Part shown: in pieces, positions 6,147 to 53,932 of the stretch
Layout: each line of letters begins with the position of its first letter
Numbering within the stretch: the stretch's first letter is position 1
IMG/VR virus record: IMGVR_UViG_3300010334_000023
Location: 1 to 64,000 of that record
Length of the DNA: 64,000 bases
Strand: one strand, 5' to 3'
Position numbers and translations under genes: made by a program
Notes under the pieces: generated by a model
Database searches by the model: none
Seen by the model: only the letters and a program-made list of their open reading frames with translations
Told to the model about the DNA's origin: nothing

Positions 6147-6879
6147 CCCGTTCTCCCCATCGCACTATCTCCCAGCGTCCATCCTCATGCTCAACCAATG
6201 CGGTGCAGCTTTCCACCCAGTCTCCGCAGTTCATGTAGGCAATACCATCCACGTCTCGGATGTTGGCATGATGTATGTGCCCACAGATGATGCCATCGCA
6301 GCCATGTGTGCGAGCGTAGCCGCTGAGATTCTCTTCGTAGTCCCCTATGAAGTTCACAGCCTGCTTGACCTTGTACTTGGCCCAAGCTGACAGGCTCCAA
6401 GGTCTCAGTCCCAGCATGCGCCTTGAGCCACTTACTACCACGTTGAGGCCTATGAGCGCATCATAGGCCCAGCTGCCAAGATGTGCTAGCCACTTGGCAT
6501 GCTTGATCACCACGTCGAACTGATCACCATGCATGACCTTGTAGCGCTTGCCATTGGCACCTCTGTACACGCAGGTATCAACCAAGCGTATGTTGCCAAA
6601 GTCGTGATCGCCAAAGCTGCGCAGGAACTCGTCGTGGTTGCCAGGCAGATATGTGACGTTAGTGCCCTTGCGTGCCTGCCTCAGTATCTTCTGTATGACG
6701 TCGTTGTGCACCTGCGGCCACATGAAGCTCTTGCTCATGGCCCATCCGTCAATGATGTCACCCACTAGAAACAGGTTGTCAGTCTCGAATGTCTTGAAGA
6801 AATCTAACAGCGCAGCAGCGTTGCTCATCTTGGTGCCCAGGTGAACGTCACTGATCCAGACGCTCCTGTACTCCATCAT
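6109..6879 (-). CDS. plcP: PlcP-type phospholipase C (LpxH-like metallophosphoesterase)
   Basis: ISDVHLG, GDIIDGW, W.Q.HNDVIQK.LR.ARKG, GNHDE, HGDQFD, WS.SAWAK..VK.AVNFI, CGHIH, GDWVESCTA. Confidence 0.8.
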   Translation of the reverse strand: MMEYRSVWISDVHLGTKMSNAAALLDFFKTFETDNLFLVGDIIDGWAMSKSFMWPQVHNDVIQKILRQARKGTNVTYLPGNHDEFLRSFGDHDFGNIRLVDTCVYRGANGKRYKVMHGDQFDVVIKHAKWLAHLGSWAYDALIGLNVVVSGSRRMLGLRPWSLSAWAKYKVKQAVNFIGDYEENLSGYARTHGCDGIICGHIHHANIRDVDGIAYMNCGDWVESCTALVEHEDGRWEIVRWGERDVGPGSVGDTRE

Positions 6880-7904
6880 AGGTTAAACAGAGCCTTCACT
6901 GTGTCTAAGCCGTTCAACACTTTCTGTCGATCTGCTTCAGCACGGGCCTTGGCTTCTGCGGTCTCGGCCTTGTCACGCTTCTTGGCATTGACGTCTGTCA
7001 TGGCTTTCTGTTCGTAGCGATCCACGAACTTGGCCAAGAAGTCATGCGCATCTGCAAACCCAGCCAGGTCTTTCTTGCCGTACATGTGGTTAAGCTCAAA
7101 GCTGCGTGCCAAGCCTTTCACTGCGTTGACCAGCTTGGCGATCTTGACGTCACTGGGATCGTTGCCACGGAAACGGTTCAGCAAGGTATCCAGCTTGGCA
7201 GTGCTGGGCTCTCGTCCAGTGATCTGCTCATACTCGTTGACAAAGATGTCGTAGATAAAACTTTCTGGATCAGTGCTGATGGTCTTGATCACCGTGTTCT
7301 TCTGCTTGCTGAACGGCACATGCACATCATCCACGGTCTTGAGCTGCACGCCCGCATGCTGTATGCTCATATCCAACAGCTCGCCCAGCACGCTGAACAT
7401 GTTACCAGTGAGCAGGCCTTTGACCCCGCGCTCTGGTGTCACTCTGGCAGCACCCCAGGCCCTTAGCTGAGGTGGGTGCCACATGAAGTCCACCTGCACG
7501 TACTGATCGGGTCCTATCTGGAATATGGGATGGCCTGGCTTGCTCTCGCCCGTGTGTATGTAATCCGGCTGAGTGCTTTTCACGAACTGATCAGCCAGCT
7601 GGTTCCAGTGGTTGGTGTATTGACCGTAGCTGGCACCCATCACATCTGGCGCTATCATCTGCAGATCGATGTCACCGTAGATCTTGTCTGGATGCTCTTT
7701 GCTATCTATCTCATGATAGGTGCCAGATCCAGTGGGCCGACCCAGCTCTACCTGACCTTGATTCATAGCACTGAGCCAGCGATTGAAGTCTCGCACAAAC
7801 TGCTGCACCTTGGCCAGCGTGATCTTGACAGTGGCTGGTTTGATCACCGTGCCCTGTGTTACTGTGGTGTCCCAGCCACCTTCGAGGAGTTCTGTTATGC
7901 GCAT
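6876..7904 (-). CDS. putative pol-beta-type nucleotidyltransferase
   Basis: TGSG...YGDIDL and VQVD motifs; TAAATA upstream; MRITELLE N-terminus. Confidence 0.55.
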   Translation of the reverse strand: MRITELLEGGWDTTVTQGTVIKPATVKITLAKVQQFVRDFNRWLSAMNQGQVELGRPTGSGTYHEIDSKEHPDKIYGDIDLQMIAPDVMGASYGQYTNHWNQLADQFVKSTQPDYIHTGESKPGHPIFQIGPDQYVQVDFMWHPPQLRAWGAARVTPERGVKGLLTGNMFSVLGELLDMSIQHAGVQLKTVDDVHVPFSKQKNTVIKTISTDPESFIYDIFVNEYEQITGREPSTAKLDTLLNRFRGNDPSDVKIAKLVNAVKGLARSFELNHMYGKKDLAGFADAHDFLAKFVDRYEQKAMTDVNAKKRDKAETAEAKARAEADRQKVLNGLDTVKALFNL

Positions 7905-7911
7905 GAGCTAT

Positions 7912-8256
7912 TTACACACTGCCCCACTTGAGCAGATCAAACATCGTGGTGTATTCCCAGTGATCAAAGGATGGCGCAAACTCACGGCCCGGCCCAGCAT
8001 GATGGTCTATCACGCGCCTTCGCAGTATGCGCTTCAGCCACACGATCTTGCCCAGCTTGATCGGACAGTCTGTGCTGAACGGTGCTTGATCATGCCAATA
8101 CAACATCTGCACTGGTCGCCACGCAAACCATGATTCCCATCGCTGGCGTTCTGGCCTGATATAGAATCTATGACCGTAGAGGTTATCTAAATCGTAGCGA
8201 CTGTAGCAACTTGTCATGCAGCAGCATAGTGCAGACATGGCTAGGGCAGCAATCAA
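7912..8256 (-). CDS. hypothetical protein (true start probably downstream of the hairpin)
   Basis: ORF with W..WFAWRPV motif. Confidence 0.55.
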   Translation of the reverse strand: MIAALAMSALCCCMTSCYSRYDLDNLYGHRFYIRPERQRWESWFAWRPVQMLYWHDQAPFSTDCPIKLGKIVWLKRILRRRVIDHHAGPGREFAPSFDHWEYTTMFDLLKWGSV

Positions 8257-8273
8257 TCTGGTTGCTGCCCTAG
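8241..8273. terminator. 12-bp hairpin, probable terminator
   Basis: CTAGGGCAGCAA / TTGCTGCCCTAG inverted repeat just after the 8292 stop. Confidence 0.65.
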
Positions 8274-8291
8274 AATGTTATTAGCCTGCGA

Positions 8292-8633: not shown

Positions 8634-8680
8634 GTGTAACTCCTGTGTGTGTTGCGTTGTGTGTGTTTGCTTCAACATGT

Positions 8681-8712
8681 GTACAATAGCACGGTTATAC
8701 AGCACGTCAACC
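8681..8712 (-). promoter_or_regulatory. sigma70-type early promoter (GGTTGACG...GTGCTATTGT)
   Basis: Repeated motif. Confidence 0.75.
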
Positions 8713-9379: not shown

Positions 9380-9404
9380 GTCTGTGCTCCTTGTTTGCTT
9401 ATAT

Positions 9405-13695: not shown

Positions 13696-14102
13696 CAGAG
13701 TCTGCTGAGCACGCGAGCCATGTCTGGGTTCATCTTGGCTATGGCATCTGGCCAGCCAATCAGCGCATAACCATCCATCTCAGGTATGAGCCTGCCCTCG
13801 TCATCCTCAAACTCACTGAAACACCAGCAGTCATCCAGCTTGGGCAAACTGGTGGTATGAAAGCGAAACAGTGCTAGATCCTTGTGTGGCTTGTAGTCAT
13901 GCACACCAAGGTCTTCCAGCAGGTCAGCGGTCAATCTTATGCCAGTCTCTTCTCTGAGCTCGCGCAGCGCGGTCTGCACATGCGTCTCACCTGGATCCTG
14001 TCGGCCCTTGGGTATGTCCCAGTAGCTTTGGCCAGTTGGATGGCAGATCAACAGCAGATTACCATCTGTTATCAGCACGCCGCAGGTTGTTTTCTTGCTC
14101 AT
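13695..14102 (-). CDS. NUDIX hydrolase
   Basis: PKG...GET...TALRELREETG Nudix box. Confidence 0.9.
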   Translation of the reverse strand: MSKKTTCGVLITDGNLLLICHPTGQSYWDIPKGRQDPGETHVQTALRELREETGIRLTADLLEDLGVHDYKPHKDLALFRFHTTSLPKLDDCWCFSEFEDDEGRLIPEMDGYALIGWPDAIAKMNPDMARVLSRL

Positions 14103-14114
14103 GGCCCTATTTAT

Positions 14115-14895: not shown

Positions 14896-15023
14896 AGTAT
14901 CTCCTTGATGCGAGCCTCCAGCACCGCTATCGCGGTGTGTATGTGCCCGGTGTCATGCGGCTGCAGGCGCGCCCTGAGTATTGCTATCTCCAGCTCTAAC
15001 GCCTTGACATGATCATGATCCAA
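14877..15023 (-). CDS. 48-aa protein (L.PHDTGHIHTAI.VLE.RI), TTG start
   Basis: Translated by hand; AGGAG RBS; fills the gap. Confidence 0.55.
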   Translation of the reverse strand: MDHDHVKALELEIAILRARLQPHDTGHIHTAIAVLEARIKEILCSEST

Positions 15024-15237
15024 TGTGAGCTCCTGCCATCATGATTTCTTCGAAAGTAAACTGATCATCAGTAAGCACGCCGTTGACCCAATTCATCCCA
15101 GCTTCTACCACGTATAGATAGCTGTAGCCTTGGAATGATCGCCTAGCCCAAGGCACGCCGTCTATGTTGAAATCTACCATGCAGTAGCCTTCCTTGCCCG
15201 GAGGCGCAGCTATCTCGTGGATTTCGTAGTCCTTCAT
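15013..15237 (-). CDS. hypothetical protein
   Basis: ORF with TTGACA upstream. Confidence 0.6.
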   Translation of the reverse strand: MKDYEIHEIAAPPGKEGYCMVDFNIDGVPWARRSFQGYSYLYVVEAGMNWVNGVLTDDQFTFEEIMMAGAHIGS

Positions 15238-16154: not shown

Positions 16155-16604
16155 TTAGCCCAACTCTCGGCAGCGTTTCTGGAACAGCCGCAGTCTCTCT
16201 GCTGCGCTGTCGTTGCTGATCAGCATGTTCACGTTCCAAGTCACTGGTTCTGGCATGCTGTCCAGCGCACACCACTTGTGATCAACGTTTTCCCAGTCCA
16301 AGCTGGGCGTGAACTGCTGAGGCACGCAGATCGCATAATCAACTGCCACGAACCTTGGTTCCTGGGTGATGCGCTTGCTGAGCATGATGTATGGTGCCGA
16401 ACCAAGTTCCCAGTCCATTTCTTCTGTCAGCTCTCTGCGCAGTGCTATGATGTGCTTCTCACCTGGCTCCACATGCCCACCCGGTAGATCCCACTGCAGC
16501 GGCCTGTCCACTAGGTCGCTGCGCAGCAGAAACAGATAGGTATCATCCAATCTGCTCCATATCAGGGCCTTGCTGCTGCCGTGGTTCAATTCAGAGATTC
16601 GCAT
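16155..16604 (-). CDS. NUDIX hydrolase
   Basis: PGGHVEPGE....ALRRELTEE. Confidence 0.85.
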   Translation of the reverse strand: MRISELNHGSSKALIWSRLDDTYLFLLRSDLVDRPLQWDLPGGHVEPGEKHIIALRRELTEEMDWELGSAPYIMLSKRITQEPRFVAVDYAICVPQQFTPSLDWENVDHKWCALDSMPEPVTWNVNMLISNDSAAERLRLFQKRCRELG

Positions 16605-22441: not shown

Positions 22442-23149
22442 ATGAGCGATCTCATAGTTACCAGCTATTTCACGGCCAAGAGCGATCGAGGCAAGGCCTT
22501 AGCTCCTCGTGATGATATCAGCTACATTGGATCTTGGTACCGCAGCGTGGTATCTCTGGGTTTGAACGGATTGATCCTGCATGATGGTCTCAGCGCAGAT
22601 TTCATGTCTGCTCACAGCACTGACAGGATCAGCTTCCAGTATCATGATAGCCATAGATGGAGCCCCAATGACGAGCGTTACATAGGGCTGTTGGATGTAT
22701 TAGAAACTACTTCTCATGATAGGATACTCCTGACCGATGGCAACGATGTCACGGTGAATCGCGATCCATTCGAGTTCATGACCGAACACAGGCTCTATTG
22801 CGGCACTGACATGCCCCAGGTTCATCGCCTGCGTGACAATGGCAGCTGCATGCAGAAGTGGCGCACGCTCAGACCATTGCTGGGTGTCAGTGATGAGGAA
22901 AGCGAACAATTCCTAGAGTTTGATCACGCGGCCGTGGGAATCTGCGGCGGACCCAGGGATCTCATGTTGTTACTGTTCAGATTGGTAGCCAGCGAGATGC
23001 GCAGGATCAACGACGATCGGAACCACAACTTCATGCTGATCAATTGGCTGCTGTGGAAGCACAGATTTTCGTTCTGGAAGGGTGCGCCATTTACCAGCCC
23101 GTTGTTTACCTTTGACAAATCCAGTGATTACTATCTCACTCACAAGTGA
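22442..23149 (+). CDS. putative glycosyltransferase-like protein
   Basis: NDERY, ILLTD..DV...RDPF, G..GG motifs; TAAATA upstream. Confidence 0.55.
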   Translation: MSDLIVTSYFTAKSDRGKALAPRDDISYIGSWYRSVVSLGLNGLILHDGLSADFMSAHSTDRISFQYHDSHRWSPNDERYIGLLDVLETTSHDRILLTDGNDVTVNRDPFEFMTEHRLYCGTDMPQVHRLRDNGSCMQKWRTLRPLLGVSDEESEQFLEFDHAAVGICGGPRDLMLLLFRLVASEMRRINDDRNHNFMLINWLLWKHRFSFWKGAPFTSPLFTFDKSSDYYLTHK

Positions 23150-39887: not shown

Positions 39888-40721
39888 TTAAATCTTCTTC
39901 GGTGTAAACACGCCGTACATATGTTTGCTACTAGGTCCTTTGCTGCGGCGATTATCTATAGTTCCGGCTCGGTATATCTTACGATTAGCTGGTAATTTAG
40001 GTGCCACTCTTTGCCGATTTTTTTCCCAGTCTGCTCTAAGTTGTGCGTAATCTGGCTGTTTAACCATAGTTGCTAATACGGTGCGTGGTACCACAACATT
40101 ACCTAGCTTATCGCTTATGTCTGTTAAGCTTGTGCCTTGTTGATATAGATATCGCATTGTTTTTAGCATTTCCGGCGTGACCTTACCAGCTAAATGATCA
40201 GTACCGGGTTGTGATCGCTTTAATTCCACATCTTTCTTTACTGTACCTTGCCCTAGAATCTCATCTATCCATTGCTGTGCAGTGCTATGATCTATTTCGT
40301 ATTTCTTACCTATGTCGCGCAAGTTCATGCCCGACCTCCAGAGATCTGCCACCTCACGTTTGACATCAGGTGTACCCAGCGTGGTTTGCGGTTTCTGGAA
40401 TTGTTTATTGGGCCTGTTTGGATAGTATGCAGACAACAGATGATCAATTCTGCGCAGTTTCAGTCCCATTAGTTCAGCTATCTCTTCTCTGCGCCAACCT
40501 TCATCCCATAGGTTCTTGAGAGTTTCTATGGTATCAGGTGTCACAAAAGTGAATTTTTTCTCACGGTCAGGATAATGACGTTTGATGTCTGATCTAATCT
40601 TTTCTACAGGCTTATTGAATTTGTCTGCGATGTCATTGCTAGTGAAACCTTGGTCAACCAATGATCTTAGCTGATCAATGTAGGTTTGATCAGCTTCAAC
40701 AATGAATTCCCAGGCTCTCAT
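39888..40721 (-). CDS. protein with four tandem HTH-like repeats
   Basis: L...G....DI...F/L repeats; start MRAWEFIVEA. Confidence 0.65.
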   Translation of the reverse strand: MRAWEFIVEADQTYIDQLRSLVDQGFTSNDIADKFNKPVEKIRSDIKRHYPDREKKFTFVTPDTIETLKNLWDEGWRREEIAELMGLKLRRIDHLLSAYYPNRPNKQFQKPQTTLGTPDVKREVADLWRSGMNLRDIGKKYEIDHSTAQQWIDEILGQGTVKKDVELKRSQPGTDHLAGKVTPEMLKTMRYLYQQGTSLTDISDKLGNVVVPRTVLATMVKQPDYAQLRADWEKNRQRVAPKLPANRKIYRAGTIDNRRSKGPSSKHMYGVFTPKKI

Positions 40722-40725
40722 AGCG

Positions 40726-43236
40726 TCACCACTGCACGTTCCACTGGAACGTCCTATTGGTTTTGGGATTGGTCTGCTGCTGTATGGTATAACCAAGATT
40801 AGTGAAGTAATTGATTATAGTGCCCATCTGATCAGCATAGGGGCGTGTTTGGTTTGGATCCAGCGCATTGCCGCCTTGCCACACTTGGAAGTAATCATAG
40901 CTGGCAGGATAACCGATAACGCTCATGGTACCACTACCATAACCTATGGTAGCTGTTGCTGTAGCAATGTTACCCCCTAGGTTCTGAGGAGCGCTGACTG
41001 TGATAGTAGGTATGCTTTGGTATCCCTGACCTTGATCGGTGATTGCTATGGTGGCCAAGCTGTAACCAATCACAGTAGTAGTGCTTGGTTGAACCGGCTG
41101 CGTTGTCTCGCCTGCGCCAGCGATAACATTTACCTGCGGCACGTTGCTGTAGTCCTGTCCACCATTTGTGACCACGATCTGCTGTATGCCTGTGCTGTAT
41201 AGGCTCACGTTGGCAGTGGCTGATCCGCTCACGGTCACGTTTGGAATGCTGGTATAATTGATGCCTTGATTGGTGATGGTCAAGCTTGCTATCGCAGTTG
41301 GCATCAGCTGAGCTGTGGCTGTAGCTCCGGTACCATCGCCTGTGATCTGCACCTGCGGAGCGCTGGTATAGCCATAACCACCGTTGGTGACAATTATGTT
41401 GTTGATAGCACCACCAGATATCACAGCAGTGGCTTCTGCACCCATGCCGTATGTGCTGCTGAAGTTTACCTGTGCGGTAGTATAGCCGCTTCCTGCGTTG
41501 CCCACGTTGACAAACTGCACAGATGTAACTGCTAGGTTAGCAGATGCTGTAGCACCGCTGCCACTGGTTATGGTTACTTCTGGTGCCTGCACATATCCTA
41601 AGCCAGGAGAAGTAATCACTACGTTGCTCACGCTTCCATTGTCTAGCAGAGTATAGGCTGCTGCTCCTGTGCCAACGCCATCTTGAGCTGCTATCAGCAC
41701 CGTTGGTGGCTGCGTGTAATTTGACCCACCTGAACTTAGCACCACGCTGCTGAGCCCAGCTGTGAGATTGAAAGCTGCGGCCTGTCCGCTACCACCGTAT
41801 GCCGCGTTGCCCTGCATGGCGGGTAGTATGCTGTACAAACCGCTGGTCAGCAGCGTGAAGTTTACGATGCTACCAGCAGCATCAACTAGGTTAACTATGA
41901 TGGTGGCACTGGCCGAACCTTCGCCTCCAGACACTATCAACGTATCACCAACCACATATTGGCTGCCAGCACCACCTGTGGTCAGGGTCGCTGTGAGTAT
42001 CTGCATGAATACTCCGCTCACAGCCGCACCAGATCCCACTGCTGTGATGGTGATGCTTGGGGATTGTGTGTATGTACCGCTGTTGGTCAAAATATTGATG
42101 TCACCCACCCCGGTTGGCTGCAGATATGCTGTAGCCAAAGCTCCACTGCCGCTGGTGATTTCTATGGCAGGTTGGCTCACATATCCAGTGCCAGGTGCTG
42201 ACACGCCTATGGTACTGACCGTGCCAGCTGATAGTGTAGTGTAAGCCTGTGCTCCTGTGCCGCCTCCACCCGCTATGGTTACCAACGGCGGAGCTGTATA
42301 CTGCAGTCCAGTACTGGCCACAGCAATGGTGCCTATGCCCATGCTGAGATCAAGCGTACAACCAGTACCACCACCCGGTGACACAGTGGTCATCACGTTG
42401 CCAAGCTGCGGCAGTGTGCTGTACAGCCCAGGCATAGAAAGCGCCACTGCCTGCACTGATCCGTTGTTATCAGCACTTGTTATCGTGGCTTTGGTTGGCG
42501 AGCCCACACCTCCCACTATGCTGAGAACGTCACCTATGGCGTAGTTGATACCAGATTGATTAACTATGGCACTGACTGCAGCAAAAGATGCTGGTCCTGC
42601 CACAGCACCGCTGCCCTGCCCAACGATCTCTACAGTGGGAGGATAGTGATAACCGGTGCCATTGCTGCCGACCACGATGTAGCTCACGGCTCCATAGGGA
42701 GCTAGATATGCCTGTGCTGTGGCTGACACAGTAGCGTTGCCACCGGTAATGGTCACAGTTGGTGTTGCTGAATAACCGTTGCCCTCATCTGTGAGCACTA
42801 TGCTGGTCAATCCGCTGCTGATGGATATTGCTATCGGTCTAGCTGCTAGGGCTGCCTGCTTGCTAGCAGCCAACCTAATGTTGTTGGCATCCACGAAGAT
42901 TACATAGTATATGTTGTTTAGCTGTAGTGGGCTTGGTAGCTCACCTGTGCTGTTTACAAAAACCTCATCTCCGGTGTTCCAAGGATGATTTGGCACTTCA
43001 AAAGTGCTGGTGCTGTCGTTGATGTCGTATACTTGCTCGGTCACGCCATAGTTCTGCGTCATGGTAGTGCCGCCATTGATCAGAGCATTGTAGAAACCTG
43101 TGCGAACAGCTTCAAGTATTGCTGCGCTTATCGCTGTACCCTCATCAAAGACCACTCTCTCGCGTATGGGATTCTGCCTGGCATCAGCAGCTGTGATGAA
43201 GATGCTGCTGGCAGTTGTACCGAAATTAGTTGGCAT
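40726..43236 (-). CDS. Gly/Thr-rich repetitive virion structural protein
   Basis: Many G.GY...P.V.I.GG.G.GA.A repeats. Confidence 0.8.
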   Translation of the reverse strand: MPTNFGTTASSIFITAADARQNPIRERVVFDEGTAISAAILEAVRTGFYNALINGGTTMTQNYGVTEQVYDINDSTSTFEVPNHPWNTGDEVFVNSTGELPSPLQLNNIYYVIFVDANNIRLAASKQAALAARPIAISISSGLTSIVLTDEGNGYSATPTVTITGGNATVSATAQAYLAPYGAVSYIVVGSNGTGYHYPPTVEIVGQGSGAVAGPASFAAVSAIVNQSGINYAIGDVLSIVGGVGSPTKATITSADNNGSVQAVALSMPGLYSTLPQLGNVMTTVSPGGGTGCTLDLSMGIGTIAVASTGLQYTAPPLVTIAGGGGTGAQAYTTLSAGTVSTIGVSAPGTGYVSQPAIEITSGSGALATAYLQPTGVGDINILTNSGTYTQSPSITITAVGSGAAVSGVFMQILTATLTTGGAGSQYVVGDTLIVSGGEGSASATIIVNLVDAAGSIVNFTLLTSGLYSILPAMQGNAAYGGSGQAAAFNLTAGLSSVVLSSGGSNYTQPPTVLIAAQDGVGTGAAAYTLLDNGSVSNVVITSPGLGYVQAPEVTITSGSGATASANLAVTSVQFVNVGNAGSGYTTAQVNFSSTYGMGAEATAVISGGAINNIIVTNGGYGYTSAPQVQITGDGTGATATAQLMPTAIASLTITNQGINYTSIPNVTVSGSATANVSLYSTGIQQIVVTNGGQDYSNVPQVNVIAGAGETTQPVQPSTTTVIGYSLATIAITDQGQGYQSIPTITVSAPQNLGGNIATATATIGYGSGTMSVIGYPASYDYFQVWQGGNALDPNQTRPYADQMGTIINYFTNLGYTIQQQTNPKTNRTFQWNVQW

Positions 43237-43570
43237 CGTTCACGCCCTTCCTGGCTGCTTTGCTAGCCATCTTCTGGACTTTCTCTTGGCTCTTTTCCAG
43301 TTCATCACTGCCTGGCACCGATGATTCTATCTCGTCCTGTTCAAGCTCTACCCTGTCAGGCAATATACGCTTTACACCACTCTTGTCCTTGAGAGTATCC
43401 ATGACCCAGCGTGTATTAGCATCAAAGCCTTGGTTGTGCATGGCACTGAGGATCTCCTTCATGGGGATGCTTGCCTCATCCTTGCTGCGATAGATGCTCA
43501 CCATATCCATCAGGGAGTTCTGTGCCTCTTCTGGACTGCTAGGCAGGCTGGTGATCTCGCTGTATCGCAT
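43226..43570 (-). CDS. hypothetical (probable head) protein
   Basis: MRYSEI N-terminus; structural block. Confidence 0.65.
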   Translation of the reverse strand: MRYSEITSLPSSPEEAQNSLMDMVSIYRSKDEASIPMKEILSAMHNQGFDANTRWVMDTLKDKSGVKRILPDRVELEQDEIESSVPGSDELEKSQEKVQKMASKAARKGVNDAN

Positions 43571-43582
43571 GATATCACCTGC

Positions 43583-46219: not shown

Positions 46220-46301
46220 GAGAACCTTCCCCGGCCAACAGGCCTTGATGCCTTTATTGTGGTATTTATTTAGCGATAGCAGTGATCACTGCTCATAGAC
46301 T

Positions 46302-46619
46302 TCATAGGCTGAAGCTTGTGCCACATCCACAGGTGCTAGCTGCTTCTGGTACGTCAATGGAGAAATAAGAGCCAGCAAGATCAGTCTTGTAATCAACCGT
46401 GGCATTGTCTAGAAGGTCATAGCTGATCTTGTCAATTACCACTGGACCTGTGGCCGTATCAATGATCATGTCGTCTACGTCCACTGCGTCAGTCCAGCCA
46501 AAATGCTTTTCAAATCCGTTGCATCCACCAGAACGGATTTCTATGCGCGGGTAGCAGGGATTGTCTACCCTCAGCTGGCCAAAACGTTCTATGGCTTTAT
46601 CTGTGAGCTTTACTGGCAT
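46302..46619 (-). CDS. iscA: HesB/IscA iron-sulfur cluster carrier
   Basis: GGCNG and CGCGTSF. Confidence 0.88.
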   Translation of the reverse strand: MPVKLTDKAIERFGQLRVDNPCYPRIEIRSGGCNGFEKHFGWTDAVDVDDMIIDTATGPVVIDKISYDLLDNATVDYKTDLAGSYFSIDVPEAASTCGCGTSFSL

Positions 46620-47256
46620 CTTCCAACAGCTTCTTGATGTCTCTCTTGATACCGCCCGCAGTGTCCAGCGCTTTCTGGAACTTTGTAGCGTAGATATCTT
46701 CCTTGATCATGTCACCACGCAGCTCAGCTTTGCGCTGTGCTTGCCTGCTGCTCATGGCGTCTATCTTGCAGCTGGTATAACGATCATCCAGCTCAAACAG
46801 CCTACGGACCTTGCTGTCGTTAACAAAACTGTTGTTGTTAAGCATCTTGACCACAGCCAACGCTACCTCATAAAGTGTGATGTCATTGGCTATCTTTATG
46901 CCAGTGACGCTGTGTTCGATGCTGTAGTACTGTTTGCCAGCCAACCTCTTTTCGCTGAGATGTATCTCAATCTTGTATTCACCCACGCTGACACTGCTGT
47001 CGTCCCTGTGAGTCCTAGCAGCAAGTTTTTCATCGGCATTGCTTTCCATGATAACTTCATTGGTGACCTTGTTGAGAGTCTTGAGAACGTTGGCCATGGC
47101 ATGTATCTCAGCTTGGCTAGGACTGCCAGGGCCGCCTTCCGTGCTGAGGCTTTCGGTCACTAACTGAGAGGTTGTAGAAGGCGGCGGTGTTTCTCCGCTC
47201 ATTATTGCCAACATGCGTGCCATTGCTTCACGTTCTGCGTCAGTTACCACTGTCAT
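46597..47256 (-). CDS. hypothetical protein
   Basis: ORF in operon. Confidence 0.7.
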   Translation of the reverse strand: MTVVTDAEREAMARMLAIMSGETPPPSTTSQLVTESLSTEGGPGSPSQAEIHAMANVLKTLNKVTNEVIMESNADEKLAARTHRDDSSVSVGEYKIEIHLSEKRLAGKQYYSIEHSVTGIKIANDITLYEVALAVVKMLNNNSFVNDSKVRRLFELDDRYTSCKIDAMSSRQAQRKAELRGDMIKEDIYATKFQKALDTAGGIKRDIKKLLEDASKAHR

Positions 47257-47486
47257 CAGTCTCTCTCCACGTACTCAACAGTATTGTAGGTATAATAAGT
47301 CCTACCGTCAATATGTGCTCTATCCAGTACCCCCCTGAACACCAACTGTCTAGCCAGCTCTTGTTCTCGCTCATTAAGCTCCCTGCGCGGTAATGGACCT
47401 TCGTGACCTCGCACTCGTTCAGCCACCAGCATCTCGTCATTGCTGACTGGTACCATGAGACCTGCGGTGACTTCAATGAATCGCAT
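47256..47486 (-). CDS. hypothetical protein (L.ERE..LA.QLV..GVL.R)
   Basis: ORF in operon. Confidence 0.7.
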   Translation of the reverse strand: MRFIEVTAGLMVPVSNDEMLVAERVRGHEGPLPRRELNEREQELARQLVFRGVLDRAHIDGRTYYTYNTVEYVERD

Positions 47487-47489
47487 CTA

Positions 47490-48170
47490 TCACTTGCCCT
47501 TGGTCATGTCTTGACTGCTCTTGATCAGATCAGCTCCGATCGTTGCCAACGGAGTCAGTTCCTGTTTCTTGCTCTGACCAACCACAGTCTGAGGTGGGTT
47601 AGCATTGACATTGCTGCCTATCGCGCTCAGTAGTGCTCCTATCACATAGAAACGCGCTGCTTCAGCATTGCCTTTGTAAGCTGGCAGCTGTTCTGCCTGT
47701 GCTATCATCTTGCCCAGCATGTCAGCGCCCATGTCTTCCATTATAGTCTGATTTTCTTCGACAACAACAGGACCACTCTCCAGCCCTGCCAGCTGCATCA
47801 TGCGGTTAATCGCGGGCATGGCCTGCACTCCGCCCAACACACCTTCTTCGACCTTGCGGGTCACCTTGCTCTCATGTACCATCTTTAGATTCCCTTCGTG
47901 TATGATTCCCACAGTAGCTCTTGGTCCTTGGGCTATCCGCACTTCTGCTTCTCGGCCTTCGTATATCACCATGTCTCCGATCTCCAGACCCAAGAGCATG
48001 CTAGCATTTATCTTTTCTTGTTGGCTGAGATGATGCTTGGCTTGACGACTGAAACGATCAGCTGTGGTCTCATAGAGACCTTCTGAGCCATTGAGATCTA
48101 CTTGTGCGAACTTCTTGAGACGTCTCATGTCATCATCCTCCGAGGTTATGGTACGTATGAATTCAAGCAT
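47490..48170 (-). CDS. hypothetical protein (RM.QLAGL motif)
   Basis: ORF in operon. Confidence 0.7.
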   Translation of the reverse strand: MLEFIRTITSEDDDMRRLKKFAQVDLNGSEGLYETTADRFSRQAKHHLSQQEKINASMLLGLEIGDMVIYEGREAEVRIAQGPRATVGIIHEGNLKMVHESKVTRKVEEGVLGGVQAMPAINRMMQLAGLESGPVVVEENQTIMEDMGADMLGKMIAQAEQLPAYKGNAEAARFYVIGALLSAIGSNVNANPPQTVVGQSKKQELTPLATIGADLIKSSQDMTKGK

Positions 48171-48336
48171 TGGGATCGGCGTACCTTGGTTTCTTTATGG
48201 GGAACATTGGCTTGGGAAGCTTGGGCAGATCTCGCTGTGGCCCTACCTCGCGATCAACCTTGACCAGCTGACCATCCTTGCGGACCCAGGCTCGCTTGAT
48301 GCGCTTAACGCTTTCAAATACTTCATCCAGCAGCAT
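48163..48336 (-). CDS. 57-aa basic protein (MLLDEVFESVKRIKRAW...)
   Basis: Translated by hand; GGAG RBS and TAAATA upstream. Confidence 0.6.
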   Translation of the reverse strand: MLLDEVFESVKRIKRAWVRKDGQLVKVDREVGPQRDLPKLPKPMFPIKKPRYADPNA

Positions 48337-48379
48337 CTCATGCTCTCCCCAGTGTGATATTTAGTTGCTATTCATGCGA

Positions 48380-49277: not shown

Positions 49278-49487
49278 TTAGATGCGCTTGCGGCTTTTCT
49301 TGGGTTTTTCTTGCTCTTCCTCGGATTCATCGTAAGGTATGTAACCAAAGAGGCTGGGTCTGCGGTTGATATTACCCATGGGATTGGCCACGCTGGCCAC
49401 ATTACCTGCCACAGTACCGCCACTGGTGCCGCTCTCTACTAGATCGAGGAACTGATCTTCTGGTTTCAATATATCTCTGATCTTCAT
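49278..49487 (-). CDS. small protein (E....GT.AG.VASV.NP, basic tail)
   Basis: Start MKIRDIL overlaps the upstream stop. Confidence 0.65.
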   Translation of the reverse strand: MKIRDILKPEDQFLDLVESGTSGGTVAGNVASVANPMGNINRRPSLFGYIPYDESEEEQEKPKKSRKRI

Positions 49488-50245
49488 GTCTTTGCTGCCC
49501 TTTTGAGGAGATGATCGGCTGCTGCTAGTCCTGCTGCTATGGCCAAGCCTTTGATGAAAGTCATCTCTGGTTTCTTCTGAGCTATCTGAGGAGTGGTCAA
49601 GCAACCTTTGCCCGATTCTGGATCACACACATCTGACAGTTCGTAGTGATTCTCGTGTGCTAGTTTCTGGAACTGTTGTATGATGTCGCCTCGGCGTGCC
49701 TTGGCACGCAGAGCCTGTAGCAACCTAGTCACGGTCAGCTTCTTTTGCTCGGTGTCCAGATGTCCAGTGTCCCATTCGCTAGCCAAACGGCGCACGCTGC
49801 GATAGTTGCTGGTGGTGACATGCAGCTGCTGCTCTAGGTTCAACAGCAGCCTCTTGGCTGCGGCACCATCATAGCTGCTACGAGTCATCTGGTTCAACAG
49901 CTGCTTGACCGTGTTGGCATTAAAATGCACTTCATGCCAAAAGAGATCGTTGGCTTTTGGATTCTTGAGATCAAGTGCCATGCCGCTATCGTGATCGCGC
50001 AGCACTCTGAGAAATTGATAGAGATCAGTATTCTGTCGGTCGTCGCGGTCAAATCCGTTGTGGCTCATGGTACGACGAGCATATGCCTGCGCAAATGGTG
50101 CCGTGTCAAATTCGCAGCGCATGATATGCATGGCCAACAAGTAGAGAAAAGCAAGATCTGCCATCTCTTTGGCATTGTAATCGCTGGCATGGCTGGTCCT
50201 AAACAGGGTGTTTTCGCCCAGCATCCCTAGGAAAGCCAAGCTCAT
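49484..50245 (-). CDS. hypothetical protein
   Basis: ORF in operon. Confidence 0.7.
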   Translation of the reverse strand: MSLAFLGMLGENTLFRTSHASDYNAKEMADLAFLYLLAMHIMRCEFDTAPFAQAYARRTMSHNGFDRDDRQNTDLYQFLRVLRDHDSGMALDLKNPKANDLFWHEVHFNANTVKQLLNQMTRSSYDGAAAKRLLLNLEQQLHVTTSNYRSVRRLASEWDTGHLDTEQKKLTVTRLLQALRAKARRGDIIQQFQKLAHENHYELSDVCDPESGKGCLTTPQIAQKKPEMTFIKGLAIAAGLAAADHLLKRAAKT

Positions 50246-51396
50246 GGTTGATCTTCCTTCTTCATGAAGTGGGGACGGTTTACCAGCTTGATCTTGCCAC
50301 TTGGCGTGTCTGCTACATAACCCTCGTGACCTGGCACGTCTCGCAGATCTGCTCTGACCGTGCCACCAACCTGCCTATCCACATTGCTCTTCAATAGATC
50401 TTTGAGCTTGGTCAGCTGATCAGCAACCATCCATGTGGCACCATAACCTTTGGTATTCTCAGCAATCCAAGCCAGTAGATTTTCGCGTTTGCGGTCAGTG
50501 AGATCTTTGCTATTGGTCTTGGCCCATGCCAAGAAACCATTGGCAGCATCTTCCAAACCGTGAGTACCAGCATAGGCCCTGCTGTTCACATATTTCTTCA
50601 TTAGGTCTGGTAGATTAGTAAGCTGCCTTGCTGCCAAGCTAGCGGGATCTAAGAACTTATCTATACTAGCACTGTTGCTGTTGATGAAATTGCGCAGCGT
50701 TGTGATTGATTTGGTTGGCAGTGCAGTGCTTTCAAGATCTCGTATCTCTGGACCCATTATCACCAAACCCGGCGGCTCACGCAGACCACTGCTTTCAATA
50801 TCGCCAATTGCACGTGGTTCATCATCTTCTCTGCTGTCAAATCTACTGTGTACAGCAATACCAGCCCGGCTCTTGGCAATGCGCTTGCCTAAGGGGCTGT
50901 CCACAGGGATGCGATAGGTTATCTTGCTGGGCTTGAAAACATAATGACCATCTACCACTTCTGGGGTCTTGGTCCATAGCACGTCTCCCGTAAGGTATTC
51001 CTGCTTATCCTTGGGCATTGCTCGTTCCAGCATGCCATATAAACCTGCTATGCTACTTGCGTAATCTTGCCTGCCAGGATCATTTGGCTTGCGCATGAAC
51101 AGCATGGAGTTTAGATCACTGGCGCTACGAGGCATACCGCCTGGTTTCTTGCTGCCAAATCCGCTCTTGTCGGTGACTGTAAAACCGTCAGCATCGCGCC
51201 CAAATATCAGCGCAGGACTACCATCCCACTTGATGGTAACCGTGTGAGGTTGTTCAGCAGCTTGAATGAGAGCATTTAGAGCACGCTTGGCACCAGCAGA
51301 ACCTTCTTCAAACACTAGATCTTCTGGATGATCAATCCTAGCCTTGGCTTCTGTGATGAACCAACGCTGAGGTATCAGTATGTCATGATGTCTCAT
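50242..51396 (-). CDS. DUF6267-like protein with ligase/capping-type nucleotidyltransferase motifs
   Basis: RIDHPED, TIKWDG.PA..FG, GD.L, EGYV, KLVNR. Confidence 0.65.
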   Translation of the reverse strand: MRHHDILIPQRWFITEAKARIDHPEDLVFEEGSAGAKRALNALIQAAEQPHTVTIKWDGSPALIFGRDADGFTVTDKSGFGSKKPGGMPRSASDLNSMLFMRKPNDPGRQDYASSIAGLYGMLERAMPKDKQEYLTGDVLWTKTPEVVDGHYVFKPSKITYRIPVDSPLGKRIAKSRAGIAVHSRFDSREDDEPRAIGDIESSGLREPPGLVIMGPEIRDLESTALPTKSITTLRNFINSNSASIDKFLDPASLAARQLTNLPDLMKKYVNSRAYAGTHGLEDAANGFLAWAKTNSKDLTDRKRENLLAWIAENTKGYGATWMVADQLTKLKDLLKSNVDRQVGGTVRADLRDVPGHEGYVADTPSGKIKLVNRPHFMKKEDQP

Positions 51397-53246
51397 CTAG
51401 GGGCCTGCCTAACAGGTGGTGTCGTGACCTGCTTGGTTATGCTGGCTGCCAGAGTCTTGTAGCGCGGATCAGTGGGCATGATCTTCTCACCGTTAACCGT
51501 GATCGGTTCAGGTGTGCCTGTTGGTTGTGCTACAGGCGCAACAGGTTCTTTGTTGTCGGGCTGTGCCTGTGGAACATCAGTTGCCGGTTTGGCCAGCTTG
51601 GCTTTGAGATCCTCTAGATATTTGACCGCAGCATCAGGTCCTTGTGTGTGTAATATCTCATTGACCTTGGCATCTAGCTGGCTATTAGCTGTCTTGATGC
51701 CAGGTTGTGCCTTCTTGGCTGCTTTTACCATGGGAGCTGGTTTGCGAGGGGCAGGAACGGGAATCTTCTGTGTGCCAAAGGCAGAGTTGACCACATCAGC
51801 TGGTATGCCGATCTTGACCATCAGCGCATGTATAGCATCGCTATCTGTGGGAGATCCGCCATTCTTCCAAGCTTTTTCTAGCTTTGCTGCGGTGAACTGA
51901 TGCATAACTTCTTTGCTCTGCTTGGCAGCCCATGATCCGATCTTTCCCACTGCTCCCTTGATGTCAACTTCGCTGAGGTTGCGTGCGTCAGCAGCCACAG
52001 ATGCCGCGTTACCGCTCTGAGGTGCTGGTGGTTTCTCTCTGGCAGCAGGAGCTGCTGCTGCTCCGCCCTGTGTGGCTGCTTCCAATCCCTTGGAGATTGC
52101 CTGCACTTTGCGCATGAAGTCATCTTGGCTTTGCTCTATGGCCCTGTTAAACTCGTTGACATCAGCTAGATCCTTGCCTACGAAGTGACCCGACCATGAC
52201 AGCATCTTTGATTTGTCATCTTCGCTGGCATTCTGCAACACACTTTGATCCCAACCAATGTCCTTGTGCACGTTCCAATTTTGGTCTGCCACACCCTTGA
52301 GCAGGCTGTTGGCCTTGTCTATGTCACCGTCAGCCATGGCATCGTGTATCTTGTCCCAGGTGCTCTGCAGACGGTTTATGTCGGCAGGACTGCCCATGAC
52401 GTCAAGATAGAGATGTTTAACGAGGTCTTTGCCCGTCTCGGGATCGGTAGTCTTGATGTCCACCATCTCTCTGAAGCTGCTGAGCCAAACTTCCTTCTTG
52501 CCTGCGTCTGTGGTGACCACGAAATTGTGTATGACTGGATCGCCAAACAGATGTGCCAGCTCCTTGATGCCCATGCCTGCGATGTATGCCATAAGTCCTG
52601 ATGAAGCACCCTTGAGCAATGCCCCGCTAAGCTTTTCGCCCTTGAGCAGGCTGTTCAGCGTTCGTAGTATGAATCCTGCCACTGCGCCTGCACTGGCGCT
52701 CACTGCTGCCCCCGTGGCACTGCCACCGAGGAATGTGTAGCCAGCAGCTGTTAATCCAGTCGCAGCTGGTGCTGCTATCACGCTGACCAAGGCTGTGAGC
52801 GCTGCCAATACCAATGCCTGTTTGACTGGATTTTTCTTAGCCCATTCTGCGTATTTCTCGAGGCTGGTTACTGCCTGTGGGAATTTCTTGCCTATGGCTG
52901 TCTTGATCTGACCCATGGCCTTGTCAGCAGCGGCATCGAAGTTCTTGACTGGTTTGGTGTCCTGTGCTGCTGCTATTAGGCGATCCTTGTAGTCATTGAT
53001 GGTCTTGAGTCCCTTGGCACCAATGACAAGGCCCTTGCCGGCCGTGCCAAGCACCTTGCCAGCTGTGGTAGTGGCCTTGACCATCTTCTGCTCAAGATCA
53101 CCAAACAGGCTCTTGACTTGGTCTGGTGACAGTTCTGCTTCCCTGAGCACAGTGCTGTGTATGGCCAGTCCCTGCATCAACACTGCCATCTCCAGTATGG
53201 CTCTGTCGTTTGGCTCTATAAACGTGCGGAATTCTCTGGCTCTCAT
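51393..53246 (-). CDS. large Ala-rich protein with central hydrophobic segments (possible ejection protein)
   Basis: TM-like core; MRAREF N-terminus. Confidence 0.65.
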   Translation of the reverse strand: MRAREFRTFIEPNDRAILEMAVLMQGLAIHSTVLREAELSPDQVKSLFGDLEQKMVKATTTAGKVLGTAGKGLVIGAKGLKTINDYKDRLIAAAQDTKPVKNFDAAADKAMGQIKTAIGKKFPQAVTSLEKYAEWAKKNPVKQALVLAALTALVSVIAAPAATGLTAAGYTFLGGSATGAAVSASAGAVAGFILRTLNSLLKGEKLSGALLKGASSGLMAYIAGMGIKELAHLFGDPVIHNFVVTTDAGKKEVWLSSFREMVDIKTTDPETGKDLVKHLYLDVMGSPADINRLQSTWDKIHDAMADGDIDKANSLLKGVADQNWNVHKDIGWDQSVLQNASEDDKSKMLSWSGHFVGKDLADVNEFNRAIEQSQDDFMRKVQAISKGLEAATQGGAAAAPAAREKPPAPQSGNAASVAADARNLSEVDIKGAVGKIGSWAAKQSKEVMHQFTAAKLEKAWKNGGSPTDSDAIHALMVKIGIPADVVNSAFGTQKIPVPAPRKPAPMVKAAKKAQPGIKTANSQLDAKVNEILHTQGPDAAVKYLEDLKAKLAKPATDVPQAQPDNKEPVAPVAQPTGTPEPITVNGEKIMPTDPRYKTLAASITKQVTTPPVRQAPR

Positions 53247-53932
53247 TCTGCACCTCTGAGGGCTTGTATGGCTGCCATGGCAGCATCTATGTCAGTGGCA
53301 CTGGCTGTCATCTTTGGTTCCTCTGTGGCCGAGCCAGTTGATTTGGCCGAAGTTGATTTCTGTGTGGTGGTCCTGGGTTTGGATGCTGCTGGTGTTTCAG
53401 GCTGTGCTGTGCCACCGGCTGCATCGCCAAACTCCTCCATCTCCATCTTGCGAACAGCTGCTATTCCTATGAGCTTATCCAATATCATCTCAGCTGTCTT
53501 AGCGTCTGTGATCTGCCATACTCGTTCAATGGTATTACCAGCCGTGTTAAGCTGAGCAGGACTTAGCCTCGGCGGTGTCTTTACATTAGCACCCAGCAGT
53601 TTCTTGTTGGTGCTCAGTGCCTTGACTATGCCTGATATCTCAGAATCTGGTAAGCCCATGTTCTTGCGCATGTAGTAATAGATGGCTCTAGTCGGAAGCT
53701 GTTCTATGTTCTTGGTGCTGATAGGATTGTCATCCCCATCTTTGTAGCGTCCTGCTAGCTGCATCATCACAGCCAAATGCCGTGCGATGTTCTTGGTCAT
53801 CTCAGCTTCGCCACCTGCTGCCGACCTATCGTTTTTTGGAACTACTCCAACCAGCCACTGGCGCAGCCCAGCCCATACTTCATCTAGCTCTTCGGCTTCC
53901 AGTGGCACGAATGTAAATTCGCTGACTCTCAT
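53243..53932 (-). CDS. hypothetical (probable internal head) protein
   Basis: MRVSEF...EELDE N-terminus. Confidence 0.65.
   Translation of the reverse strand: MRVSEFTFVPLEAEELDEVWAGLRQWLVGVVPKNDRSAAGGEAEMTKNIARHLAVMMQLAGRYKDGDDNPISTKNIEQLPTRAIYYYMRKNMGLPDSEISGIVKALSTNKKLLGANVKTPPRLSPAQLNTAGNTIERVWQITDAKTAEMILDKLIGIAAVRKMEMEEFGDAAGGTAQPETPAASKPRTTTQKSTSAKSTGSATEEPKMTASATDIDAAMAAIQALRGAE

What the first reader, a model, noticed from the sequence alone, without database searches (positions are those of the whole stretch)
6876..53932. Shared capsid-targeting-like N-terminus on unrelated enzymes and DNA-binding proteins
Seen: MRITELLE (7904), MRISEL (16604), MRAWEFIVEA (40721), MRYSEI (43570), MRFIEV (47486), MLLDEVFE (48336), MKIRDIL (49487), MRHHDIL...FITEA (51396), MRAREF (53246), MRVSEF (53932); most lie in TAAATA-driven units. 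Known: T4 internal proteins carry a roughly 10-aa capsid-targeting sequence (MKTYQEFIAE-type) removed by gp21 after Glu. Inference: an address tag that loads a payload (NTase, NUDIX, HTH protein, ligase-like protein) into the head for injection.
Basis: partly seen in the sequence, partly recalled or inferred. Interest (0 to 1): 0.7.

Follow-up and report, generated by a model that had tools for sequence, protein, structure and literature searches.

The report
Capsid-address tag on jumbo-phage proteins
A giant T4-related phage puts the same short N-terminal "address label" on about a dozen unrelated proteins, including enzymes and DNA binders. In a cultured relative, proteins with this label are found overwhelmingly inside the virus particle, so the label most likely loads cargo into the head as the T4 capsid targeting sequence does.

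Summary
All ten N-termini are in the sequence. MRxxE[FILV] opens 8 of 222 chosen ORFs against 0.16 expected, p = 7e-12.

The window is the first 64 kb of a 216-kb fragment of an Atu_ph07/Rak2-like jumbo phage of the T4 superfamily. It has a T4 gp21-type prohead protease.

- **No shared ancestry:** the tagged proteins show no sequence similarity to each other.
- **Conserved pattern in homologues:** hundreds of metagenomic homologues keep the tag pattern while its letters vary. In two families the tag ends in [L/I/V]-x-Glu directly before the invariant mature domain, which is the T4 gp21 cleavage rule.
- **Near-canonical T4 tag:** one protein of this genome begins MKSFREYLAE. Its Atu_ph07 homologue gp113 begins MKTLQDYLTE. 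Both match T4's MKTYQEFIAE in register.
- **Virion proteomics:** in Atu_ph07, 24 of 29 tagged proteins are in the published virion proteome against 107 of 685 others, p = 2e-14.

Cleavage, scaffold binding and injection remain inferred. This is a new member of a known kind.

The parts
6876..7904 (-). 342-aa Pol beta-like nucleotidyltransferase with tag MRITELLE before an invariant GGWD
   Evidence: It has 790 homologues. Glu precedes GGW in 101 of 101 and P3 is L/I/V in 100 of 101. Residues 1-10 are disordered in the AF2 model (pLDDT 88.9 overall). Foldseek matches Pol beta and TdT (E = 5.6e-4).
7909..7914 (-). TAAATA (T4 late-promoter-like) 4 nt upstream of the 7904 start codon, with no Shine-Dalgarno sequence
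15013..15237 (-). 74-aa ORF starting MKDYEI; weak candidate member
   Evidence: It matches the regex only; no homologue or proteome support.
16155..16604 (-). 149-aa NUDIX hydrolase with tag MRISEL
   Evidence: 26 of its 27 homologues begin with Met; 20 of those 26 have R/K at position 2 and 21 of 22 read at position 5 have E/D, over a near-invariant body. The boundary residue is not Glu and no TAAATA is nearby, so this is the least secure member.
39888..40721 (-). 277-aa basic protein (pI 9.7) with several helix-turn-helix motifs and tag MRAWEFIVE|A
   Evidence: The start lies 5 nt after the stop of the upstream gene. The tag resembles T4 MKTYQEFIAE with one residue fewer.
43226..43570 (-). 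114-aa protein with tag MRYSEI, at the position of Atu_ph07 gp43 (MRLIDLLE, in the virion) and Phosso CDS 459 (MRLSEII)
   Evidence: The correspondence rests on synteny only; there is no BLAST hit.
46263..46272 (-). Two overlapping TAAATA heading the unit 46219 -> 43570 -> 43236 -> 40721
47256..47486 (-). 76-aa protein with tag MRFIEV; homologue of Atu_ph07 gp46 (MKFIDIV, in the virion) and Phosso CDS 455 (MRFYEI)
   Evidence: (phrog_16215, virion structural protein)
48163..48336 (-). 57-aa very basic protein (mature pI 10.8) with variant tag MLLDEVFE|S
   Evidence: The same MLLxELF variant is found in 7904 homologues and in virion protein Atu_ph07 gp483.
48358..48363 (-). TAAATA 21 nt upstream of the 48336 start
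49278..49487 (-). 69-aa protein with tag MKIRDIL; resembles Phosso CDS 449 (MKAIEIL) by eye in tag, size and a Gly-rich stretch
   Evidence: No significant BLAST hit.
50242..51396 (-). 384-aa DUF6267 ligase-like nucleotidyltransferase with a bipartite tag: MRHHDIL, a spacer, then FITE|A before an invariant KARIDHPED
   Evidence: It has 589 homologues; P1 is Glu in 107 of 110 and P3 is L/I in 107 of 110. K56, D58 and G59 are invariant. All top 50 PDB matches are RNA or DNA ligases (Z up to 7.1). Residues 1-18 are disordered.
51393..53246 (-). 617-aa basic protein rich in Ala, Lys and Pro (pI 9.2) with tag MRAREF...FIE|P
   Evidence: No family match.
53243..53932 (-). 229-aa protein with tag MRVSEF...PLE|A
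   Evidence: No family match.
54204..54209 (-). TAAATA heading the overlapping run 54180 -> 53932 -> 53246 -> 51396 -> 50245 -> 49487
   Evidence: Start and stop codons overlap between successive genes.

Best explanation
The shared N-terminus is a capsid targeting sequence of the T4 type, used by an Atu_ph07/Rak2-like jumbo phage.

Proposed sequence of events:
1. Tagged proteins are made late, from TAAATA promoters read with a gp55-like sigma factor.
2. The first 6-10 residues, M-[R/K]-x-x-[E/D]-[F/I/L/V] and often one or two more hydrophobic residues, hold the protein on the scaffolding core while the prohead assembles on the portal.
3. After the shell closes, the gp21-type prohead protease cuts behind a Glu in [L/I/V]-x-E. 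The tag is removed and the mature protein is freed inside the head.
4. DNA is packaged around the cargo, and the cargo leaves with the DNA at the next infection.

In this window the cargo comprises a Pol beta-like nucleotidyltransferase, a ligase-like DUF6267 enzyme, a NUDIX hydrolase, a multi-HTH DNA-binding protein and several small or basic proteins.

Shown here: the motif, its restriction to N-termini, its conservation, the Glu boundary, the protease gene, and virion residence of tag-bearing proteins in a relative. Inferred from T4: binding to the core, cleavage and ejection.
For: **Motif and position**
- N-terminal enrichment: p = 4e-8 and 7e-12.
- Selection at protein level.
- Carriers are unrelated to each other.

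**Phage background**
- T4-type protease Peptidase_S77 at genome 112152-112793.
- Head module in T4 order, with a tagged 71-aa protein right after the portal gene.
- gp55-like late sigma homologue and TAAATA placed upstream of gene starts.

**Comparison with T4, read directly from NC_000866**
- ipII and ipIII start MKTYQEFIAE.
- Genome 79302 starts MKSFREYLAE. The true start of its Atu_ph07 homologue gp113 reads MKTLQDYLTE.

**Homologue families**
- The tag pattern is kept while its residues vary and the body is invariant.
- Glu at P1 in 101/101 and 107/110; L/I/V at P3 in 100/101 and 107/110.
- The tag is disordered in both AF2 models.

**Proteomics of relatives**
- In Atu_ph07, 24 of 29 tagged CDS are in the virion ESI-MS/MS list of PMC6102473, against 107 of 685 untagged (p = 1.8e-14). 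With the gp53-63 paralogue array counted once, p = 5e-8. For gp330-714 alone, where virion proteins are sparse, p = 7e-6.
- Three tagged proteins of this genome have sequence homologues among those virion proteins: gp46, gp113 and gp199.
- PA5oct gp150 (MKINDIITEG, right after the portal gene) is also a virion protein.
Against: - There are no proteomic, transcript or infection data for this phage itself.
- The Atu_ph07 virions were PEG-purified, and the list holds probable contaminants such as ribonucleotide reductase and a RecA-like protein. 'Virion-associated' is therefore a loose term there.
- Five tagged Atu_ph07 CDS were not detected (gp216, 229, 360, 365, 428).
- In PA5oct the regex predicts virion residence only weakly: 4 of 8, p = 0.056.
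- Only three of about fourteen tagged proteins here have detectable homologues among proteins seen in virions.
- The NUDIX family has no Glu at the tag/domain boundary, and its gene lacks a nearby TAAATA.
- No peptide-level data show that the tag is removed.
Confidence: 0.8

Rival explanations
1. The peptide is a protease-removed pro-sequence that only keeps enzymes inactive until head maturation. It does not address them; packaging would depend on other parts of each protein.
For: The [L/I/V]-x-E boundary shows a likely cleavage site, not targeting. In T4, targeting and processing map to different residues of the tag (PMC9026906).
Against: The conserved part includes positions 2, 5 and 6, far from the cut in the bipartite DUF6267 tags. 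Carriers are unrelated, and many are small non-enzymes. The tag alone predicts virion residence across scattered Atu_ph07 genes. This rival still requires entry into the prohead, where the protease acts.
Confidence: 0.07
2. The peptide is a recognition signal for another machine, for example the phage-encoded Clp chaperone/protease system or a membrane-proximal assembly factor. Virion residence would be secondary.
For: Relatives encode ClpX, ClpA, ClpP and ClpS. Iyer et al. (PMC7824862) suggest that AAA+ proteins may move proteins into heads.
Against: The tag is close in sequence and register to the experimentally defined T4 tag and ends in the gp21-type site. Met-Arg/Lys N-termini are not ClpS N-degrons (my own knowledge of the bacterial N-end rule). 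Core-position proteins next to the portal and protease genes carry the tag.
Confidence: 0.05
3. The resemblance is chance or a by-product of translation-start preferences, with no shared function.
For: Lys or Arg at position 2 is fairly common at bacterial and phage N-termini. In AT-rich PA5oct the regex also hits proteins not seen in virions.
Against: Enrichment p-values of 4e-8 to 7e-12. Synonymous Arg codons from two codon families. Pattern conservation across 100+ homologues in each of two families, and across 26 NUDIX homologues. Proteome association p = 2e-14.
Confidence: 0.02

Closest known systems
[quoted passage not shown]
   Same: A peptide of about 10 residues at the N-terminus of unrelated proteins. 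It starts Met-Lys/Arg, has hydrophobic or aromatic positions, and ends in [L/I]-x-Glu. The phage has a gp21-type protease (Peptidase_S77) and a T4-order head module. One member here (MKSFREYLAE) and Atu_ph07 gp113 (MKTLQDYLTE) match MKTYQEFIAE in register.
   Different: - The commonest form here is one residue shorter (M-R-x-x-E-F/I/L).
- Some tags are bipartite, with a 0-8 residue spacer before the L-x-E site.
- There are many more carriers: about 14 in 216 kb here, and at least 29 in Atu_ph07 against four in T4.
- The cargo includes a Pol beta-like nucleotidyltransferase, a ligase-like enzyme and a NUDIX hydrolase rather than small basic proteins and an ADP-ribosyltransferase.
- Function has not been tested experimentally in this clade.
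Propeptides of inner-body and ejection proteins of phiKZ-like giant phages (phiKZ gp175, 201phi2-1, SPN3US gp245; PMC5694885, PMC7411985, PMC10052503)
   Same: Many head-internal proteins are cut after Glu by a distant gp21 relative, and the cargo is ejected into the host.
   Different: As I recall those studies, the propeptides there are long and variable with several sites. No short shared N-terminal address is known to me. That clade is a different group of jumbo phages from this T4-superfamily one.
Virion proteome of Agrobacterium phage Atu_ph07 (Attai et al. 2018, PMC6102473)
   Same: One of the nearest cultured relatives (53% protease identity; only Phosso, at 58%, is nearer), with a gene cluster gp31-76 syntenic with window 37-60 kb. 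131 virion-associated proteins were listed.
   Different: That paper does not mention an N-terminal motif, cleavage or internal proteins (term search). The link between tag and virion residence is made here. Some starts and ORFs are mis-annotated there (gp113; ORFs at 22449, 315248 and 333031), which hides further tags.

Membership tests
T4-type capsid targeting sequence / internal-protein system | Short peptide at the extreme N-terminus of otherwise unrelated proteins | tested here: met
   Ten of 12 motif hits are at the first ATG. There is no pairwise similarity among carriers. The tag is disordered and lies outside the fold.
T4-type capsid targeting sequence / internal-protein system | Sequence likeness to MKTYQEFIAE (Met, Lys/Arg, hydrophobic or aromatic at positions 4 and 7, Glu at the end) | tested here: met
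   The T4 sequence was read from NC_000866. MKSFREYLAE (genome 79302) and MKTLQDYLTE (Atu_ph07 gp113) match in register. The main form MRxxEF(I)xE is one residue shorter.
T4-type capsid targeting sequence / internal-protein system | Tag ends in the prohead-protease site [L/I]-x-Glu | tested here: met
   Met for two families: P1 = E in 101/101 and 107/110, and P3 = L/I/V in 100/101 and 107/110, at the boundary with the invariant domain. Not met at the NUDIX boundary, where only Glu5 is available.
T4-type capsid targeting sequence / internal-protein system | Phage encodes a gp21-type prohead protease and a scaffolding core | tested here: met
   Peptidase_S77 at E = 1e-26, above the curated cut-off. 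The order portal, small tagged protein, protease, 401-aa scaffold-like protein, major capsid protein follows T4.
T4-type capsid targeting sequence / internal-protein system | Tagged proteins reside in the mature virion | tested here: met
   Tested in a relative only. In Atu_ph07, 24 of 29 tagged against 107 of 685 untagged are in the virion list. The association is weak in PA5oct (4 of 8). No data exist for this phage.
T4-type capsid targeting sequence / internal-protein system | Late expression | tested here: inconclusive
   TAAATA lies upstream of the units holding nine of the ten genes, and a gp55-like sigma homologue is present. There are no transcript data.
T4-type capsid targeting sequence / internal-protein system | Tag is removed in the mature particle | not testable with these tools
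   This needs peptide-level mass spectrometry. The published tables give only protein-level coverage.
T4-type capsid targeting sequence / internal-protein system | Tag is necessary and sufficient to package a foreign protein, and the cargo is ejected into the host | not testable with these tools
   This needs tag-GFP fusions and infection assays in a cultured relative.
phiKZ-like inner-body / ejection-protein propeptides | Membership of the phiKZ-like jumbo-phage clade | tested here: not met
   The 25 best-ranked of 2605 protease matches are Atu_ph07/Rak2-like phages, with no phiKZ-like phage among them; by name, most of the 2605 are T4-type phages.
phiKZ-like inner-body / ejection-protein propeptides | Long N-terminal propeptides with several Glu sites and no shared short address (as I recall the phiKZ and SPN3US studies) | tested here: not met
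   Tags here are 5-16 residues long and share one pattern.

The most novel reading that the evidence does not exclude
The tag is a readable address that reveals, from sequence alone, the whole set of proteins that uncultivated T4-superfamily jumbo phages carry into the host. That set would include a pre-made RNA/nucleotide toolkit: a Pol beta-like nucleotidyltransferase, an RNA-ligase-like DUF6267 enzyme and a NUDIX hydrolase. Injected with the DNA, these enzymes could repair or neutralise host defence damage, such as cleaved tRNAs or signalling nucleotides, before any phage gene is expressed.
Probability: 0.25. Interest if true: 0.8.

Novelty: new member of a known kind. Interest (0 to 1): 0.62.

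Why it matters
The T4 capsid targeting sequence is a classic, but it is documented for only a handful of small proteins in T4 and its close kin. This finding shows the same device, recognisable by sequence, in the distant Atu_ph07/Rak2-like jumbo phages. There it marks dozens of proteins per genome, including enzymes.

This has three consequences:
- Much of the internal cargo of the head becomes predictable from raw sequence in hundreds of uncultivated giant phages.
- It explains why many scattered 'hypothetical' proteins appear in jumbo-phage virion proteomes.
- It nominates specific injected enzymes (nucleotidyltransferase, ligase-like, NUDIX, multi-HTH) as candidates for very early host take-over or counter-defence.

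It also offers a natural set of tags for loading foreign proteins into large capsids.

Tried and rejected
- **Nucleotide similarity to known phages:** a megablast of window 40000-46500 found nothing. Relatives were reached only through the protease protein.
- **Paralogy among tagged proteins:** none was found.
- **RNA-level explanation:** rejected on codon diversity.
- **Direct orthology of each tagged window protein to Atu_ph07 or Phosso proteins:** only the proteins starting at 47486, 115247 and 79302 gave hits. The others are too diverged, so I dropped a planned comparison of tagged and untagged DUF6267 copies between phages.
- **Sequence search of the DUF6267 protein against solved structures:** no hit. 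The fold comparison gave only moderate scores.
- **PA5oct as a second proteome test:** underpowered and weak, 4 of 8, p = 0.056.
- **Complex prediction of the prohead protease with the first 30 residues of the DUF6267 protein:** 'no answer'. This is not evidence either way.
- **Start-codon caveat:** my gene calls use a home-made coding score and Shine-Dalgarno rule, and several starts were first misplaced by it. The statistics therefore use the first ATG of each ORF, chosen without reference to the motif.

Full report
**What the window is.** The 64-kb window is the start of a single 216,498-bp viral contig, rated 42% complete by CheckV. It encodes a T4 gp21-type prohead protease (Pfam Peptidase_S77, E = 1e-26, genome 112152-112793). 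The nearest relatives by that protein are Sinorhizobium phage Phosso (469 kb, 58% identity), Agrobacterium phage Atu_ph07 (490 kb), Pseudomonas phage PA5oct, Salicola SCTP-2, XacN1 and RaK2. This is therefore a fragment of an Atu_ph07/Rak2-like jumbo phage of the T4 superfamily.

The head module follows T4 order:
- portal (genome 115278-117044)
- a 71-aa protein
- two proteins of unknown function
- the protease
- a 401-aa scaffold-like protein
- the major capsid protein (109721-110920)

A gp55-like late sigma homologue lies at genome 125869-126633. Other genes in the window include ribonucleotide reductase, topoisomerase II subunits, a DnaB helicase, a pectate-lyase-like fibre protein and a sodium:solute symporter.

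**Checking the observation.** All ten N-termini are present at the stated minus-strand coordinates. I chose 231 ORFs by coding score alone and looked at every in-frame ATG.
- M[RK]xx[ED][FILV] occurs 12 times among 1766 ATGs, and 10 of the 12 are the first ATG of the ORF (Fisher p = 4e-8).
- The stricter MRxxE[FILV] opens 8 of 222 ORFs where 0.16 are expected (p = 7e-12).
- Arg at position 2 is encoded by CGC, CGA, CGT and AGA, so selection acts on the peptide.
- The carriers have no detectable similarity to each other.
- Further members lie outside the window: MKSFREYLAE (genome 79302), MRWREIITE|GG (109297, next to the capsid gene) and MRADEF (115247, next to the portal gene).

**Conservation.** Phosso keeps the tag on positional counterparts: MRYNEF after the portal gene, MRASELFEF after the protease gene, MRFYEI, MRLSEII and MKAIEIL. 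PA5oct has MKINDIITEG after its portal gene.

Three families were followed into metagenomes.
- **The 7904 protein** has 790 homologues. Of the 120 best, 101 could be anchored on the invariant GGW, and they nearly all (88 of 101) start M-[R/K], with E/D/Q at position 5 in 100 and I/L/V/F at position 6 in 100. Some read MKSYEFLIE or MLLxELFE.
- **The NUDIX protein** has 27 homologues, 26 of which begin with Met. Of those 26, 20 have R/K at position 2, and 21 of the 22 read at position 5 have E/D, over a nearly invariant body.
- **The DUF6267 protein** has 589 homologues. They start M-[R/K]-[I/H]-x-[E/D]-[I/L/V], followed by a spacer of 0-8 residues and then [L/I]-x-E right before an invariant KARIDHPED.

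At the boundary between the variable tag and the invariant domain, P1 is Glu in 101/101 and 107/110 sequences. P3 is L/I/V in 100/101 and 107/110. That is the T4 gp21 rule, cleavage after Glu in [L/I]-x-E, as reviewed in PMC9026906. AlphaFold2 models of both proteins are confident (pLDDT 88.9 and 88.8) except for residues 1-10 and 1-18, which are exactly the tags.

**Comparison with T4 itself.** I read T4 from NC_000866 rather than from memory. ipII and ipIII begin MKTYQEFIAE, alt begins MELITELFDE and gp22 begins MLKEQLIAEA.

The protein at genome 79302 begins MKSFREYLAE. Its Atu_ph07 homologue gp113 is annotated from a later Met. Read from the ATG 29 codons upstream of that annotated start (record position 85148), it begins MKTLQDYLTE. 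Both match the T4 tag residue for residue in register.

The review states that targeting in T4 depends mainly on positions 4 and 7, and processing on positions 8 and 10. Those positions are hydrophobic/aromatic and L/I and Glu here as well. The commonest form in this phage, MRxxEF(I)xE, is the same pattern with one residue fewer.

Attai et al. (PMC6102473) list 131 virion-associated proteins of Atu_ph07 by ESI-MS/MS. I downloaded the whole record. The gp numbers proved to be CDS ordinals, which I checked at nine named genes.
- Twenty-nine annotated CDS begin M[RK]xx[EDQ][FILVM].
- Twenty-four of them are in the virion list: gp43, 46, 47, the eleven paralogues gp53-63 (MRWEQLTE, MKWHQLTE and similar), 106, 196, 199, 381, 408, 482, 487, 548, 561 and 672.
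- Five are not: gp216, 229, 360, 365 and 428.
- Among untagged CDS, 107 of 685 are in the list.
- Fisher p = 1.8e-14. With the paralogue array counted once, p = 5e-8. Within gp330-714, where virion proteins are sparse, 7 of 10 against 33 of 375 gives p = 7e-6.

Window 37-60 kb is syntenic with the Atu_ph07 virion cluster gp31-76. Three tagged proteins of this genome have sequence homologues among the detected proteins: 47486 with gp46, 115247 with gp199, and 79302 with gp113. Other detected proteins carry variant tags the regex misses, such as gp483 MLLSELF and gp394 MQYTDLIE|A. A second N-terminal pattern, RKFxNILNE|S, occurs on gp33, gp206 and gp594.

In PA5oct, whose annotation flags the proteins detected by mass spectrometry, the regex is only weakly predictive: 4 of 8, p = 0.056. 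That genome's N-termini often start Met-Lys, so chance matches are likelier.

**Cargo.**
- The 7904 protein has the G-S...D-x-D signature and a Pol beta/TdT-like fold (Foldseek E = 5.6e-4).
- The 109297 protein has a similar GS...DIDL signature, judged by eye only.
- The 16604 protein is a NUDIX hydrolase.
- The 40721 protein carries several helix-turn-helix motifs and is basic.
- The 51396 protein is DUF6267 with an invariant K-x-D-G. All of its 50 best PDB matches are ATP-dependent RNA or DNA ligases, with moderate scores (Z up to 7.1).
- The rest are small or basic proteins of unknown function.

**Expression.** TAAATA is not enriched overall, but it is strongly placed. Twelve of 14 copies on the minus strand of the window sit within 54 nt upstream of a gene start. 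Those at 54204, 48358, 46263 and 7909 head the co-directional, often overlapping, gene runs that contain nine of the ten tagged genes. The NUDIX gene is the exception.

**Conclusion.** It is a T4-type capsid targeting sequence with a gp21-type cleavage site, used on a much larger and more enzymatic cargo set in a distant jumbo-phage clade.
- Shown: motif, position, conservation, Glu boundary, protease gene, and virion residence in a relative.
- Inferred from T4: binding to the scaffolding core, removal of the tag, and ejection.

The Atu_ph07 and PA5oct genome papers and the jumbo-phage comparative review do not mention such a tag in term searches. The papers in the library that name a capsid targeting sequence concern T4, P1, P22 or phiKZ-like phages. 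I therefore rate it a new member of a known kind, of moderate to high interest.

Noticed in passing
window 7904-7914 and 14102-14113: TAAATA sits only 4-5 nt upstream of the ATG and there is no Shine-Dalgarno sequence. If it is a T4-type late promoter, these mRNAs would be leaderless or nearly so.
   Followed up: partly
window 27889-29346 (-): A 485-aa sodium:solute symporter family protein (Pfam SSF, E = 5e-13) is encoded by the phage, with a TAAATA-headed gene directly upstream. This is an unusual membrane transporter for a phage.
   Followed up: no
L002:3688-5617 (genome 67688-69617, -): By their N-terminal sequences, adjacent ORFs of 541 and 96 aa look like GroEL (MAAKDVIFG...) and GroES (MELRPLNNRVIVKR). 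This rests on recognition by eye only; no family search was run.
   Followed up: no
L009:8800-12498 (genome 212800-216498): The end of the contig is filled with period-9/18/27 repeats of the GGTNNNACN type, that is a collagen-like Gly-X-Y coding array several kb long. My ORF caller split it into spurious pieces. The contig ends inside it, which may be why assembly stopped there.
   Followed up: partly
L017:34393-35148 (Atu_ph07 record 84393-85148, -): Atu_ph07 gp113 is annotated from an internal Met. Read from the upstream ATG at record 85148, the ORF begins MKTLQDYLTE, a near copy of the T4 tag. Unannotated ORFs with tags also lie at record 22449-22868 (+), 315248-315526 (-) and 333031-333468 (-).
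   Followed up: partly
L016:39484-50000 and L017:1-592 (Atu_ph07 gp53-gp63): A tandem array of eleven paralogous proteins (252-778 aa), all starting M[RK]W.QL.E or similar and all detected in virions. This looks like an expanded family of head-internal proteins. This genome has no such array at the syntenic place.
   Followed up: partly
Atu_ph07 gp33, gp206, gp594; Phosso L010:13162-13740 and L011:4025-4765: A second shared N-terminal pattern, x(3-5)-R-K-[FYH]-x-[ND]-[IM]-[LI]-[NS]-E followed by Ser or Ala, occurs on other virion proteins (all three Atu_ph07 examples were detected by mass spectrometry). A third pattern, M[DN]I[ED][RK]LK.LAG, occurs on gp111 and gp257. These may be further classes of propeptide.
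   Followed up: no
window 62227-63339 and 63452-64000 (+), continuing to genome 65218: Two adjacent plus-strand genes start MGRPLKKKYFG and MGRPVKKSYMG. The same opening is found on the abundant Atu_ph07 virion proteins gp466 and gp498. This is another conserved N-terminus, probably belonging to a structural protein family rather than being a tag.
   Followed up: no
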